DNA of 64,000 nt, taken from positions 6,262,001 to 6,326,000 of the forward strand of contig NW_026889772.1 of assembly GCF_033153115.1 (NCBI RefSeq). Reading direction: 5' to 3'. Positions 44,237 to 58,047 of this stretch are shown one piece after another (position 1 is the stretch's first letter; every line of letters begins with the position of its first letter). The notes beneath the pieces were generated by a model. It had not been told where the DNA came from. It was given only the letters and a program-made list of their open reading frames with translations, and made no database searches. Source of the stretch: Saccostrea echinata. Taxonomy: Eukaryota. A program made the position numbers and the translations under genes.

Positions 44237-45811
44237 TCAATAATCGTCTCCATGTAGAGATTCAGAATTTGCAAATGACATGGTTGATTCTGGGCGATAG
44301 ACAAATTCAGTCTCTTCTTGATGTTCAAAGGTCACACTTGGTCCTTGATTTTGGTTGGTCAGCTGTTGTCTGTGGGATCCTGTAGAAATATGCAGACGAG
44401 AACTAGACCGACTTCTGCCACTTTGTACAGACTCTTTGTGAGGTATTGAAGAATTAGAAGTTCTCTCAGGAAATATATGATAGAGATGCAGAGTATTTAT
44501 TGGGCCATGGAAGTGATTGTGATGTTTATTGTCAGAACTTTCATTCTGTTGGTCAGCTCTAGACAAGTTTGTGATGGTTTTGGAACCAGGATTGTTTGAT
44601 TTTGGCACTGTATTTATGGGATTTTCTGTTTGGCAGTGAGTACTAGTACATTCTGCTTTCAGGTTAGCACTGCATGCTTTATCAACTGAAGTTTTATGAG
44701 ACTTTCGCCTGGCCTTTGACATATTGTAGTTTAATTTTTCAGTTTCTTTCAATTTTTCCTTTAATTCATGATACAATTTGTGGAGCTTTCTGCTTTCATT
44801 ATCTCTATGGGCTACCTTTTGCTTCTCATCCTCGAGTAATTTCAGTATCTTTGTCTTTTCTGAAGCATTAAGTTCTTGTTTGTCATATTGTTCCTGCAGT
44901 TTTCTCTCCCATTGTTGATTGCACATTATGAGACCTTTCTCTATTTCTATGACTTGTCTCCTGCACTCATCCTTAATCTTCTCTTTGTCTTCCTCATATT
45001 TTTCTATCTTCATCTCCAGTTTCTGGATTTGATTTTTCTGCCTGATGCTTATTTCTCTGTATTGTTCATGCAGCTCATCTTTATCTTTGTTACTGGTTAT
45101 CCTTTGGTTTTCTGCAACACTGTCCACAAGGTCATGAATTTGCTCTTTGTGGTCCATCTTTGACAAGATGTTTTCAGCTCTTTTGAGTCCTAGATTTTCA
45201 GATTCTATAATACTTATCACGGCTTGTCTAAATTTTCTTTCTCTGAGCTTGAACTCCTCTAATAACATCTTACAGTGGACAAGTGTACCTACACCTTTCA
45301 GTTTTGTTTTTGGTAGGAAGGCCTGCAGTTCGTCTGAAAAAATAAGCTCCCTGCAGCGATTCTGACACTTTTCAATTGATTTTACCTCTTCTCTCAGCTT
45401 CTTGGTGAAAGGAATCGATTCTGGGATATCCGAGAAATCAAAAGACTTGCTAAGTTGAGCAAGGGCTTGCAGAATCTTTGAGGATTCATCCAAGACTTTT
45501 TCAGTGGGTAAAAGTTCACCTGCATTTGCATGACAGAAGGAATAAATAATATGAGCAGCTTTTGTTAGCTGATTAACATCTGTTGAGCAGTCCTCCTCAG
45601 TTTGTGTCCAGCATTCTGTGTACACTTTTTTGGGAGAAATAATTTTGGTAGCTTTCTGACGATTTCTTTGTTTTTGGTTTGCACGTTTAGTTGACACCCC
45701 TGTTAATTCTTTTCCCGTGGTTCTGTTTGTGTTAGGAACAGTTGATTCTTTGGCTGATGGTTTGTATGTGATATTCACAGTTGAGGTTTCTTTACCTGTA
45801 GTTTTATTCAT
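44237..45811 (-). CDS. Cluster gene E: 524-aa coiled-coil protein with His/Asn-rich motif and C-terminal SFANS motif
   Basis: 1.57-kb open frame in AT-rich DNA. Basic Thr-rich N-terminus with short internal repeats (NKTTGKE/NRTTGKE), long K/E/Q heptad region, HHNHFHGPINTLHL, ending TMSFANSESLHGDDY. Probable upstream exon ~46027-46116 with a GTAAGT donor. Confidence 0.8.
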   Translation of the reverse strand: MNKTTGKETSTVNITYKPSAKESTVPNTNRTTGKELTGVSTKRANQKQRNRQKATKIISPKKVYTECWTQTEEDCSTDVNQLTKAAHIIYSFCHANAGELLPTEKVLDESSKILQALAQLSKSFDFSDIPESIPFTKKLREEVKSIEKCQNRCRELIFSDELQAFLPKTKLKGVGTLVHCKMLLEEFKLRERKFRQAVISIIESENLGLKRAENILSKMDHKEQIHDLVDSVAENQRITSNKDKDELHEQYREISIRQKNQIQKLEMKIEKYEEDKEKIKDECRRQVIEIEKGLIMCNQQWERKLQEQYDKQELNASEKTKILKLLEDEKQKVAHRDNESRKLHKLYHELKEKLKETEKLNYNMSKARRKSHKTSVDKACSANLKAECTSTHCQTENPINTVPKSNNPGSKTITNLSRADQQNESSDNKHHNHFHGPINTLHLYHIFPERTSNSSIPHKESVQSGRSRSSSRLHISTGSHRQQLTNQNQGPSVTFEHQEETEFVYRPESTMSFANSESLHGDDY

Positions 45812-56577: not shown

Positions 56578-58047
56578 TCACCTAGGCACTTCATCTGAAT
56601 GAGAACTGTTCGCAAAGCTCACATCTGAGAGTTCTGAGCGTGGCCTAGTGAGTGCAGACCCTCTACCCTGACTCTCTAAGGTTGAACTTAGGCCACTGTT
56701 GGCACAGCTGATCAAAGAATGTTCACTATCATCTCTCCTTAGTTTGTGTAAAACTGATGGAGTGATAGGTCCAGATAATCGTCTCCTGTACATTTCACCC
56801 TTCTCTTTCAATACCTGTGTATAGTCTTCTATCAATAAATCTGATTCTTCTTCAGGTTCTGAAAGCTTTAATTTTAGGTGACGAATCTGATCCCTTAGCT
56901 CATCATTTTCAGTGTAACAAGTCTCTAGTTCAGATGTTAGTGTCTGGACTTTTTCTTCCAAGTCTTTGATTTTCTCCTCGGAATGATTCGATTCCTTTAT
57001 CATTGATTTATGCTTGCTTTTTAATTCTATATTTCGAACATTCATCATATCCGCTTCAGACTGGAGTTTCTTGTTTTTGTTTTCCAGCAGTTTATTTTTA
57101 TGATTAACCTTCTCTATGTCTTTGTGGTAACCCTGACACTTCTTTTCTAGGGCTTTGTTTCTTTGTTCTAACTCCTGTATTTTGTCTTTCAGACTTTGAT
57201 TGTCTGTGGTGAGCTCTGAATTCTTGTCCTCCAGTGATGATAAAGAAAATTCGTATTTATTAATCTTATCCTGAAGTCCAACCTGCTTCTCCGTGTGTAT
57301 TTTTATGGCATTTTGATGGCTTTGCCTTGTTTGCACAAATTTACTTTCCAACTCAATTATCATATCTTCCAATTCCTTATTTTTGTCAGCTACTTGCTTC
57401 TTCTCCACCTTAAGTTTCTCTACATCATTCTGGAATGTTCTAGACCTGTTTGTATGGAACTTCACCAGTTCTTTTTCACTTTTTAGATTAGATTCACATT
57501 TATGTAACATTTGCTTGATTTGAGAATTTTCTTGCAAGAGATGTCCAATGTCCTCAAGAAAACTAGATTTCTTACTTGACCTGTCAAGAACAGCTTCAAT
57601 ATCCTTAGTCAGGGTCTGTATGGCACTCAATGACCTTCGCGTCAAGTCTGTTGGACTTTCCATAAGACTTGGTCGTCCAAGTAGAAGTTCTGTAAGCTGA
57701 CTGTTCATTTGACACAGAATCTTTTTGGCTTCACTATGATTCCTTTCTATTTTCAGAACTTTTTTGGTTGAGCTTGTTTTTGGTTTTGTGCCCTTGGCTG
57801 GTTCTCCCTGATTTTTTGCCTGGTCAGAATGTTTTTTGGTTAAATCAAGGGAAGTTTTGGATTGTTCCAATGACTTTTTTGTGGAATTCTCAGAACTTTT
57901 TCCCTTCTCTGTAACTTTCCTGCTGGGTTCCGTTGGATTTTGATCGTGATCATTGTCATTCTTTGTTGCTTCTCCCTTGCTTGTAATCTCTTTGTCACTG
58001 GGACTTGTTTTGGAATTTTTCCCTTTCTTTGTCTGGTTCTGTGCCAT
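56578..58047 (-). CDS. Cluster gene I: 489-aa coiled-coil protein with two S[FC]ANS motifs
   Basis: 1.47-kb ORF with a K/S/T-rich head, QLTELLLG helix and ~230-aa coiled coil. Tail LISCANSGLS...SDVSFANSSHS. Confidence 0.82.
   Translation of the reverse strand: MAQNQTKKGKNSKTSPSDKEITSKGEATKNDNDHDQNPTEPSRKVTEKGKSSENSTKKSLEQSKTSLDLTKKHSDQAKNQGEPAKGTKPKTSSTKKVLKIERNHSEAKKILCQMNSQLTELLLGRPSLMESPTDLTRRSLSAIQTLTKDIEAVLDRSSKKSSFLEDIGHLLQENSQIKQMLHKCESNLKSEKELVKFHTNRSRTFQNDVEKLKVEKKQVADKNKELEDMIIELESKFVQTRQSHQNAIKIHTEKQVGLQDKINKYEFSLSSLEDKNSELTTDNQSLKDKIQELEQRNKALEKKCQGYHKDIEKVNHKNKLLENKNKKLQSEADMMNVRNIELKSKHKSMIKESNHSEEKIKDLEEKVQTLTSELETCYTENDELRDQIRHLKLKLSEPEEESDLLIEDYTQVLKEKGEMYRRRLSGPITPSVLHKLRRDDSEHSLISCANSGLSSTLESQGRGSALTRPRSELSDVSFANSSHSDEVPR

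What the first reader, a model, noticed from the sequence alone, without database searches (positions are those of the whole stretch)
44237..58047. A shared, apparently undescribed short linear motif [ILVM]-S-[FC]-A-N-[SC] ends five otherwise divergent coiled-coil proteins
Seen, 8 occurrences: E TMSFANSES; F TISCANSGTS and TDISFANCS; G SEISFANSS; H PLSFANSGIS and TELSFANST; I LISCANSGLS and SDVSFANSS. In F, H and I the motif is doubled about 23-30 aa apart, with the first copy always followed by G-[TIL]-S and the second preceded by [ST]-[DE]. It is the only clearly conserved element of Ser-rich disordered tails, as expected for a docking or phospho-motif. Inference: the register resembles the pLxIS IRF-docking motif (IRF3 DLHISNS vs ELSFANS) but with Ala at the phospho-acceptor position, and NSG[ILT]S resembles a DSGxS-type phosphodegron. 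Both analogies are speculative.
Basis: partly seen in the sequence, partly recalled or inferred. Interest (0 to 1): 0.75.

Follow-up and report, generated by a model that had tools for sequence, protein, structure and literature searches.

The report
Conserved tail motif in oyster coiled-coil family
A small oyster-only family of coiled-coil proteins, mostly arranged as neighbouring genes, keeps one tiny serine-flanked peptide (S-F/C-A-N) in its floppy tail while nearly everything else has drifted, which marks it as a probable phosphorylation-controlled docking site whose partner is still unknown.

Summary
The regex hits the six-frame translation of the window exactly 8 times, all in the tails of the five minus-strand ORFs.

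The five proteins are not unrelated. They are paralogues along their whole length. This genome has seven members: a sixth, J, lies about 9 kb past the window and a seventh, K, is on another contig.

Relatives were found only among oyster proteins with automatic names: Ostrea, Crassostrea, Magallana and Saccostrea.

In an 18-member alignment with 22% mean identity, the only invariant columns are the S and N of the last S-F-A-N. In closest-relative pairs the 6-residue core is 140/162 identical, against 445/1009 for the tail flanks. Codons vary synonymously. AlphaFold places the motif in low-confidence, unstructured tails.

The module is longer than reported: [RK]-x-x-[ST]-x-x-[ST]-x-Φ-S-[FC]-A-N-[ST]-x-x-[ST], repeated one to three times every 21-31 residues.

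My best reading is a multi-site phosphorylation-controlled docking module on a coiled-coil scaffold. This is inferred, not shown.

The pLxIS and DSG-degron analogies fail their defining residues. No paper or Pfam family describes the motif or the family. The scan had not noted it before on other DNA.

The parts
44237..45811 (-). Gene E, 524 aa, single ORF. N-terminal basic disordered part, helices, Ser-rich tail with one motif copy.
   Evidence: A close relative clusters with an Ostrea edulis 'uncharacterized protein'.
44264..44281 (-). Motif copy in E (M-S-F-A-N-S).
48454..49335 (-). Gene F, 293 aa, two motif copies 23 residues apart.
   Evidence: Contigs of runs X1 and X2 cover 48423-49411 only, not the neighbouring genes.
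48556..48573 (-). F, upstream copy (I-S-C-A-N-S, then G-T-S).
48487..48504 (-). F, last copy (I-S-F-A-N-C), preceded by R-R-K-N-S-G-Q-T-D.
49849..50922 (-). Gene G, 357 aa, one motif copy.
49867..49884 (-). Motif copy in G (I-S-F-A-N-S).
51533..52516 (-). Gene H, 327 aa, two motif copies 26 residues apart, plus a C-terminal Cys-rich extension.
51716..51733 (-). H, upstream copy (L-S-F-A-N-S, then G-I-S).
51638..51655 (-). H, last copy (L-S-F-A-N-S), preceded by T-E.
51536..51616 (-). H only: 27-residue C-x2-C-x11-C-x2-C piece after the last motif. It is conserved in the H-type relatives P0008 and P0009.
   Evidence: Weak DZR_2 match, E 0.071. pLDDT 56-61. Coordinates counted by me from the ORF end.
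56578..58047 (-). Gene I, 489 aa, two motif copies 30 residues apart. Helices 103-122, 132-154 and 162-395; tail 397-489 unstructured in the model.
56695..56712 (-). I, upstream copy (I-S-C-A-N-S, then G-L-S).
56605..56622 (-). I, last copy (V-S-F-A-N-S), preceded by S-D.

Best explanation
SHOWN.
- Genes E-I belong to one oyster-restricted family of intronless-looking genes. The family also includes J, about 9 kb beyond the window (L006:1135-2427, minus), and K on another contig (L025:937-2085, minus).
- Each protein has a basic disordered N-terminus, a short conserved helical hairpin, one long helix of coiled-coil type, and a Ser-rich disordered tail.
- The tail carries one to three copies, 21-31 residues apart, of a roughly 17-residue module: [RK](-9/-10)-x-x-[ST](-6)-x-x-[ST](-3)-x-Φ-S(0)-[FC]-A-N-[ST](+4)-x-x-[ST](+7).
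- S-[FC]-A-N is the most conserved element of the whole family and is maintained at the protein level.

INFERRED (about 45% for this mechanism).
- The module is a phosphorylation-controlled docking site.
- An Arg-directed (basophilic, Φ-x-R-x-x-S type) kinase would prime S(-6).
- A CK1-like kinase, which prefers S/T three residues after a phospho-residue, would then fill -3 and 0. Residues +4 and +7 would add further charge.
- The invariant Φ, F/C, A and N would give the specific contacts to a folded reader domain.
- A coiled-coil dimer would present 2-6 copies side by side, so binding would be multivalent and switch-like.
- The partner is unknown.
Nothing here tests that.
For: Paralogy and architecture.

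Family size in this genome: seven members.

Restricted range:
- The profile search of 1.84 billion representatives gave 27 proteins at E<=0.001.
- I read 17 of these (P0006-P0022). Fourteen (P0006-P0019) were family members or fragments of them, P0020 looked like a degraded fragment of an I-type protein, and P0021 and P0022 were unrelated coiled coils.
- The named members are Ostrea edulis, Crassostrea virginica, Magallana gigas and Saccostrea echinata.

Conservation:
- In A5 (18 sequences, 22% mean column identity) the only invariant columns are the S and N of the last copy; its F and A are at least 90% conserved.
- In 14 pairs of a foreign protein with its closest own paralogue, the core is 140/162 identical, the tail flanks 445/1009 and the rest 2234/4493 (totals added by hand).
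- 16 of the 18 proteins P0002-P0019 have at least one copy. The two without (P0015, P0016) are short fragments lacking the tail.

Protein-level selection: Ala uses all four codons, Asn both, and Ser(0) both the TCN and AGY families.

Disorder: pLDDT below 50 over residues 397-489 of I and 215-300 of H.

Position-specific Ser/Thr in the 13 copies of this genome, against a background of 0.25:
- 10/13 at -6
- 12/13 at -3
- 11/13 at +4
- 11/13 at +7
- only 1/13 at -5, 4/13 at -4 and 4/13 at +6

Arg at -9 in 19 of 38 instances and Leu at -11 in 12 of 38.

The strict motif is absent from other coding-looking sequence of the genome.
Against: - No phosphorylation, binding or expression-response data exist here.
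- The kinase preferences are recalled consensus rules, and such permissive patterns are common in Ser-rich sequence.
- The 38 instances are not independent, because they come from orthologues and paralogues.
- The absence of the motif from other protein families in this genome means there is no convergent use. Convergent use would be the strongest sign of a general docking motif.
- The immune link rests on adjacency only. Profile comparison with neighbours A-D found no relation (probability 1.7%).
- Scans for ISRE-like and NF-kB-like sites gave one ISRE-like site near G and no NF-kB-like site upstream of E-I. Totals were barely above shuffles: 5 against 2.0 expected, and 9 against 2.9.
- AlphaFold with only 10 sequences cannot exclude a folded or partner-induced structure.
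Confidence: 0.5

Rival explanations
1. A constitutive peptide ligand that needs no phosphate. The Φ-S-[FC]-A-N core would bind a folded domain of a partner, or the family's own N-terminal helical hairpin, by strand addition or pocket insertion. The surrounding serines would only keep the tail soluble and flexible.
For: The invariant residues are Φ, F/C, A and N rather than the flanking serines (information about 4 bits each at +1, +2 and +3, against 1.2-1.6 bits at -6, -3, +4 and +7). The N-terminal helices are the second most conserved part of I-type proteins.
Against: S(0) itself is invariant, 38/38. Ser/Thr enrichment is position-specific with a period of three, not diffuse. Neither AlphaFold model docks the tail on the helices; the tail has pLDDT below 50.
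Confidence: 0.17
2. A phosphodegron. After priming and CK1-type phosphorylation, the N-S-G-x-S part of the upstream copies would be read by a beta-TrCP-like F-box protein, so the motif would time the destruction of the scaffold.
For: The upstream copies in F, H and I read N-S-G-[TIL]-S. Gly is at +5 in 11 of 19 upstream copies and S/T at +7 in 15 of 19. An Arg-directed site followed by S/T every third residue is the logic of known primed degrons (recalled).
Against: The residue before the Ser is Asn in 38/38 copies, whereas the consensus (recalled) starts with Asp. Gly is at +5 in only 1 of 19 last copies. The invariant F/C-A core has no role in that degron. The single-copy proteins E and G lack any S-G.
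Confidence: 0.08
3. A pLxIS-like motif that recruits an IRF-family transcription factor after TBK1/IKK-type phosphorylation.
For: The last copies read [DE]-Φ-S-F-A-N-S, with D/E at -2 in 13 of 19. The genome encodes an IRF-association domain above Pfam's cut-off.
Against: By the definition read in passages of 10.1101/2022.12.18.520954, the last residue is the phosphorylated Ser. Here that position is Ala in 36/38 and Val in 2/38. Leu is only one of several residues at its position (9/38), and the Ile position is F, C or M. The same preprint says a shrimp STING lacks the classical pLxIS motif.
Confidence: 0.06
4. An amyloid-like or beta-solenoid signalling repeat, as in RHIM or HET-s-type motifs. 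The 21-31-residue spacing of the copies would correspond to stacked rungs with an Asn ladder.
For: There are one to three repeats with spacing of 21-31 residues. Asn is invariant and hydrophobic and small residues alternate around it. Earlier scan notes propose amyloid-type motifs in the neighbouring genes (untested by me).
Against: The unit has only three hydrophobic positions in a Ser-, Arg- and Asp/Glu-rich context. It has no I/V-Q-I/V-G-type core (recalled consensus; read). AlphaFold gives no strands. E and G have a single copy.
Confidence: 0.04
5. No function of its own. The motif would be a remnant of common descent, or be kept uniform by gene conversion among tandem copies.
For: All carriers are homologues. 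Six of the seven genes lie in one tandem array.
Against: The flanks have fallen to about 21% identity between paralogues while the core persists. It is kept in four oyster genera and in the unlinked copy K. Codons differ at synonymous sites, including the TCN/AGY Ser switch, which argues against conversion or a DNA-level constraint.
Confidence: 0.03

Closest known systems
pLxIS motif of STING, MAVS, TRIF and IRF3 (vertebrate IRF3 recruitment)
   Same: A short motif in a disordered, Ser-rich region near the C-terminus of an adaptor-like protein.
   Different: The defining phospho-acceptor Ser is Ala (36/38) or Val (2/38). The Ile position is F, C or M. The conserved Ser sits at the 'x' position. 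The motif is repeated. The carriers are an oyster-only family.
Primed beta-TrCP phosphodegrons (D-S-G-x-x-S and D-S-G-x-S types; consensus recalled)
   Same: An Arg-directed priming site followed by S/T at three-residue steps. S-G-x-S in the upstream copies of F, H and I.
   Different: Invariant Asn where Asp is required. Gly is absent from almost all last copies. The invariant F/C-A-N core is foreign to the degron.
Coiled-coil kinase scaffolds of innate immunity (NEMO, optineurin, TANK, NAP1, SINTBAD)
   Same: The general build: a long coiled coil, disordered Ser-rich regions and, in the H subfamily only, a small C-terminal Cys-rich zinc-finger-like piece.
   Different: No Pfam family reaches its cut-off in any of 18 members or in E-I at E<=1. 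No homologue outside oysters was found in the profile search. The H piece is C-x2-C-x11-C-x2-C.
CCDC186 and 'rho-associated protein kinase 2-like' (automatic NCBI names of the I-type proteins of M. gigas and C. virginica)
   Same: Only a long coiled coil.
   Different: No family-specific match. The C. virginica record was later renamed 'uncharacterized protein'. The profile search returned no proteins beyond the oyster family except weak coiled-coil matches.

Membership tests
Short linear motif in the general sense | A 3-10-residue conserved island inside an intrinsically disordered region, with diverged flanks | tested here: met
   pLDDT below 50 and no secondary structure over the tails. Core 140/162 identical against flanks 445/1009. 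S and N of the last copy are the only invariant columns of A5.
Short linear motif in the general sense | Recurrence in unrelated proteins (convergent use) | tested here: not met
   Genome-wide pattern for [DE]-x-S-F-A-N-S gave 3 family copies plus 8 matches. Seven of the 8 are in open frames of 13-65 codons and one is at the start of a 173-codon frame. None is Ser-rich. Only the strict last-copy form was searched.
pLxIS IRF-docking motif | Hydrophilic-L-x-I-S with the final Ser as the phosphorylated residue (definition read in passages) | tested here: not met
The I position is F 26, C 11, M 1. The L position is I 14, L 9, V 5, F 5, M 3.
pLxIS IRF-docking motif | A reader protein with an IRF-association domain exists in the organism | tested here: met
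   PF10401 matches on contig C30 at 61.6 and 39.1 bits, both over the cut-off. This shows presence only, not binding.
pLxIS IRF-docking motif | Phosphorylation by TBK1/IKK-epsilon and phospho-dependent IRF binding | not testable with these tools
   Needs kinase and binding assays.
beta-TrCP phosphodegron | D-S-G-x-x-S or D-S-G-x-S: Asp before and Gly after the first phospho-Ser (consensus recalled) | tested here: not met
   Asn 38/38 at the Asp position. Gly at +5 in 12/38, of which 1 of 19 last copies.
Primed hierarchical phosphorylation cluster (Arg-directed kinase, then CK1-type) | Arg three residues before a Ser, then S/T at +3 and +6 (rules recalled) | tested here: met
   R at -9 in 19/38, S at -6 in 25/38, S/T at -3 in 35/38, S at 0 in 38/38. 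In the 13 copies of this genome the enrichment is position-specific. This is the sequence pattern only.
Primed hierarchical phosphorylation cluster (Arg-directed kinase, then CK1-type) | The sites are actually phosphorylated, in order | not testable with these tools
   Needs phosphoproteomics or in-vitro kinase assays.
RHIM-type amyloid motif | I/V-Q-I/V-G core in a roughly 18-residue hydrophobic stretch (consensus recalled) | tested here: not met
   No Q or G at the matching positions in the 38 instances. No strands in the models.
Known coiled-coil adaptor or Pfam families (including the automatic names CCDC186 and ROCK2-like) | A match above the curated cut-off to a family model | tested here: not met
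   0 of 18 members reach any Pfam cut-off. Only generic coiled-coil models appear below cut-off. The PDB sequence search gives only coiled coils at E>=0.0055.

The most novel reading that the evidence does not exclude
The E-K proteins are oyster-specific signalling scaffolds of innate immunity. Their S-[FC]-A-N modules, once multiply phosphorylated by an Arg-directed kinase and a CK1/IKK-like kinase, would recruit a transcription factor or ligase. This would be an independently evolved, invertebrate counterpart of the vertebrate pLxIS 'kinase-licensed docking' principle, multiplied by tandem repeats and coiled-coil dimerisation, and genomically coupled to a cluster of CARD-coiled-coil adaptor genes.
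Probability: 0.1. Interest if true: 0.75.

Novelty: new variant of a known kind. Interest (0 to 1): 0.42.

Why it matters
Oysters lack adaptive immunity and have greatly expanded, poorly annotated innate-immune gene sets. Most lineage-specific genes in them are simply labelled 'uncharacterized'.

Here a whole family gets a precise, testable handle. It has seven genes in this genome and relatives in four oyster genera, including farmed ones. The handle is a roughly 17-residue module whose four core residues have survived divergence down to about 20% identity.

A synthetic peptide, with and without phosphate, is enough to fish for the partner and place the family in a pathway. If the partner turns out to be an immune transcription factor, kinase or ligase, this would be an independent invention of licensed docking outside vertebrates. 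If it is a housekeeping reader, the family is an ordinary scaffold, and the finding stays a useful annotation and a new motif class for motif databases.

Tried and rejected
Searches that led nowhere:
- Pfam on E-I and A-D at E<=1, and on 18 family members: only sub-threshold coiled-coil models.
- ESM Atlas with whole I: generic coiled-coil clusters sharing 122-152 features. With the tail alone: no usable hit.
- PDB sequence search with the family profile: coiled coils only.
- Word-based search restricted to the tail of I: 20 candidates, of which only I itself and its four I-type relatives scored.
- Word-based search with alignment A5: 7968 candidates, none at E<=0.01. This is a failure of that search, since known members are in the collection, and says nothing about range.
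- Profile comparison of the family with the neighbouring A-D genes: probability 1.7%. I therefore dropped the idea that E-I are CARD-less derivatives of A-D.

Papers:
- 'SFANS' anywhere: 60 papers, and none of the 20 listed concerns a protein motif.
- Six Ostrea edulis LOC numbers, and six accessions of the named relatives: 0 papers each.
- 'pLxIS' plus 'oyster': 2 papers. I read passages of one.
- 'domain-containing protein 186' plus 'oyster': one unrelated snail paper, seen in the listing only.
Expression tables there may list these genes, and I could not see them.

Promoter scans for ISRE-like and NF-kB-like sites: 5 against 2.0 expected, and 9 against 2.9 expected. One ISRE-like site lies about 220 bp upstream of G and there is no NF-kB-like site upstream of E-I. 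This is too weak to use.

Reads: no run is on record as RNA. Contigs of two runs cover gene F (48423-49411) and nothing of G or H. This is compatible with a compact F transcript but is not proof.

Other motif classes, considered by eye and rejected:
- N-glycosylation sequon: not met in all copies, and there is no signal peptide.
- GPI or PTS signals: no hydrophobic or S-K-L end.
- LIR, FFAT, TRAF and SPOP consensus patterns (all recalled): the register does not fit.
- A Polo-box type S-[pS/pT] reading fits many last copies (S at +4, S/T at +5 in 14 of 19) but not the upstream copies (G at +5 in 11 of 19). I keep it only as one candidate reader.

Caveat: the script paired each foreign protein with the closest of six own paralogues. 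K was not yet known, so the K-type proteins P0014 and P0018 were paired with H.

P0023-P0031 (E 1.6e-4 to 9.6e-4) were not fetched.

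
Full report
WHAT IS THERE

The stretch 44237-58047 holds five uninterrupted minus-strand ORFs:
- E, 524 aa
- F, 293 aa
- G, 357 aa
- H, 327 aa
- I, 489 aa

It hits 8 times, all in the C-terminal parts of these five ORFs and nowhere else. The shorter core S[FC]AN[SC] gives the same 8.

THEY ARE PARALOGUES, NOT FIVE UNRELATED PROTEINS

The five align end to end at 15-25% identity to E. They share an N-terminal helix (Q-L-x-x-L-L-L-G), a long coiled coil and the tail. 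S-F-A-N supplies four of the ten invariant columns.

A profile of the five, run against the window's own 923-Mb genome, finds them plus a sixth gene, J, about 9 kb beyond the window end. J's tail again carries two copies, 21 residues apart.

A broader profile finds a seventh member, K, on another contig. K has three S-C-A-N-S copies 24 residues apart, each preceded by R-P-x-S.

F, G and H are packed tightly: only 513 and 610 bases separate the ORFs (coordinates).

Profile-profile comparison with the neighbouring genes A-D shows no relation (probability 1.7%). An earlier scan note calls A-D CARD-coiled-coil genes; I did not test that.

WHERE ELSE THE FAMILY OCCURS

- A word-based search with I found four proteins of 58-60% identity. 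The last 50 or so residues, including both copies, are almost invariant in them.
- A profile search of 1.84 billion representative proteins gave 27 proteins at E<=0.001, 13 at <=1e-10 and 3 at <=1e-30.
- I read 17 of these. P0006-P0019 are family members or fragments, P0020 looks like a degraded fragment, and P0021 and P0022 are unrelated coiled coils. The remaining nine, all weaker than 1e-4, I did not fetch.
- The names the sources give are all automatic: 'uncharacterized protein' in Ostrea edulis (LOC125648077 and LOC125648082, numbers only five apart), in Crassostrea virginica (formerly 'rho-associated protein kinase 2-like') and in Saccostrea echinata; and 'coiled-coil domain-containing protein 186' in Magallana gigas.
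- J is letter for letter the Saccostrea echinata protein, on a contig of the same length as the one that carries I. The window is therefore presumably from that oyster.
- Nothing outside oysters was detected.
- No Pfam model reaches its cut-off in any of 18 members. The PDB sequence search and the ESM Atlas give only generic coiled coils or nothing.

IS THE MOTIF MORE CONSERVED THAN ITS SURROUNDINGS?

Yes.
- In the 18-sequence alignment A5 (mean column identity 22%) the only invariant columns of the entire alignment are the S and N of the last S-F-A-N. Its F and A are at least 90% conserved.
- Of the 18 proteins P0002-P0019, 16 carry at least one copy. The two without are 241- and 236-residue fragments that lack the tail.
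- I paired each of 14 foreign proteins with its closest paralogue here. The six-residue core is identical at 140 of 162 positions (86%). The rest of the tail is identical at 445 of 1009 (44%) and the remainder of the protein at 2234 of 4493 (50%) (totals added by hand).
- Between paralogues of this genome the last-copy core keeps 57% identity, against 21% for the flanks and 20% for the rest.
- The constraint is on the protein. Across the ten copies of E-J, Ala uses all four codons, Asn both, and the invariant Ser uses both TCN and AGY codons. That rules out gene conversion or a nucleotide-level element as the cause.

IS IT BACKGROUND?

No. I back-translated [DE]-x-S-F-A-N-S (T at the second base of the x codon) with each of the four Ser-codon combinations and searched the whole genome.
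- Hits: the three family copies that fit, plus eight others. The reversed-pattern controls gave two.
- Seven of the eight others lie in open frames of 13-65 codons. The eighth lies at the very start of a 173-codon frame. None has a Ser-rich context.
- So the strict motif is private to this family.
- This result also cuts the other way. There is no convergent use in other proteins, which would have been the strongest evidence for a general docking motif.
- The tool warns that its counts are lower bounds, and I searched only the strict last-copy form.

THE MODULE IS LONGER THAN REPORTED

I aligned 38 instances from 19 proteins on the invariant Ser as position 0:
- Φ at -1 in 36/38
- F 26, C 11, M 1 at +1
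- A 36, V 2 at +2
- N 38/38 at +3
- S 30/38 at +4
- S/T 30/38 at +7
- S/T 35/38 at -3
- S 25/38 at -6
- R 19/38 at -9
- L 12/38 at -11

These instances are related, so I repeated the count on the 13 copies of this genome alone, whose flanks are about 21% identical. S/T is 10/13 at -6, 12/13 at -3, 11/13 at +4 and 11/13 at +7. It is only 1/13 at -5, 4/13 at -4 and 4/13 at +6, against a tail background of 0.25. The serines are therefore position-specific, not mere composition.

Two flavours exist:
- Upstream copies often read S-C-A-N-S-G-x-[ST] (C at +1 in 11/19, G at +5 in 11/19).
- Last copies read [ST]-[DE]-Φ-S-F-A-N-S-[ST]-x-S followed by acidic residues (F 18/19, D/E at -2 in 13/19, R at -9 in 12/19).

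STRUCTURE

AlphaFold2 on I (10-sequence alignment):
- a disordered basic N-terminus (1-102)
- helices 103-122, 132-154 and 162-395
- a tail 397-489 with pLDDT below 50 and no secondary structure

H has the same build. Both of its copies fall in the low-confidence stretch 215-300. With such shallow alignments this shows only that nothing folded is predicted.

MECHANISM

Shown: a repeated, strongly selected peptide module sits in a disordered tail behind a long coiled coil.

Inferred, from recalled kinase rules:
- R at -3 of S(-6), often with a hydrophobic residue at -5, is the preference of Arg-directed (CAMK/AGC-type) kinases.
- S/T three residues after a phospho-residue is the CK1 preference. 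S(-6) could therefore prime -3 and then 0.
- The +4/+7 serines followed by acidic residues add further sites.
- The invariant Φ, F/C, A and N would give specificity for a reader domain.
- A dimeric coiled coil with one to three copies per chain would give multivalent, switch-like binding.

I put about 45% on this phospho-docking mechanism. The remainder is spread over:
- a constitutive ligand (17%)
- a degron (8%)
- an IRF-docking motif (6%)
- an amyloid-type repeat (4%)
- no function (3%)
- something not thought of

An immune role is a guess. It rests on adjacency to the CARD-type genes and on the family's fast, lineage-specific evolution. The transcription-factor-site scans do not support it beyond one ISRE-like site about 220 bp upstream of G.

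COMPARISON WITH KNOWN MOTIFS

pLxIS, as defined in passages of 10.1101/2022.12.18.520954, ends in the phosphorylated Ser. An IRF-association domain does exist in the genome, so the reader protein is available, but nothing links it to this motif.

The beta-TrCP degron (recalled consensus) needs Asp before and Gly after the first Ser. Here Asn is invariant, and Gly occurs in 12 of 38 copies and in almost none of the last copies. That is also not met.

The automatic names CCDC186 and ROCK2-like have no support.

NOVELTY

The following searches found no description of the motif or of these genes:
- the motif string
- twelve gene and protein identifiers
- pLxIS with oyster
- the automatic name with oyster

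Supplementary tables could not be opened. I therefore rate this as an undescribed family-specific motif, a new variant of a known kind of thing: a phospho-regulated short linear motif on a coiled-coil scaffold. It is real and testable, but has no demonstrated function. Interest is moderate.

EXPRESSION

No run on record as RNA holds the region. Contigs of two runs of uncertain type cover gene F from 48423 to 49411 and nothing of G or H. This is compatible with a compact, unspliced F transcript. The many short contigs that encode the relatives (for example 344 member sequences for the M. gigas I-type cluster) suggest that the family is commonly transcribed in oysters. I did not verify the nature of those contigs.

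Noticed in passing
L006:1135-2427 (minus), about G000:C23:6334601-6335893, roughly 9 kb beyond the window end: A sixth tandem paralogue, J (430-aa frame). It has two motif copies 21 residues apart and the same ending after the motif (S-T-H-S-E) as the corresponding stretch of H. It is identical to an NCBI 'uncharacterized protein' of Saccostrea echinata.
   Followed up: yes
L025:937-2085 (minus), on G000 contig C56: An unlinked seventh paralogue, K (382 aa). It has three S-C-A-N-S copies at a 24-residue period, each preceded by R-P-x-S. P0014, P0016 and P0018 look like its relatives in other oysters.
   Followed up: partly
window 51536-51616 (minus): H continues past the point where J stops with a C-x2-C-x11-C-x2-C piece. 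This piece is conserved in the H-type relatives P0008 and P0009, so it is a real small zinc-finger-like addition rather than read-through. It has a weak DZR_2 match only (E 0.071).
   Followed up: partly
window 21067-26175: A 33-bp satellite, 155 copies, 93% matches. The 1623-aa and 141-aa 'ORFs' at 20899-26197 are artefacts of it.
   Followed up: yes
window 29144-29215 and 35110-35181 (minus): Genes A and B end in a shared H-N-Y-N-I-Y-N-N-x-M-Y-S stretch, seen in the alignment of A-D. It is already the subject of another note of this scan (s1-811009).
   Followed up: no
window 51140-51150 (minus): An ISRE-like GAAANNGAAAC element about 220 bp upstream of the start codon of G. Window-wide the pattern is barely above chance (5 against 2.0 expected).
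   Followed up: partly
window 49336-49848 and 50923-51532: Only 513 and 610 bases separate the ORFs F-G and G-H. Promoters and UTRs must therefore be very compact, or transcripts overlap.
   Followed up: no
window 4675-4747 (minus): ARAGORN reports a tRNA-like sequence with an undetermined four-base anticodon. It is probably a pseudogene or a SINE-like relic.
   Followed up: no
window 60726-61049 (plus): A short tandem repeat that reads as a repeated S-P-I-M-V-[EK]-I-Y-T-A-A-T peptide in one frame. It is probably a minisatellite, not a gene.
   Followed up: no
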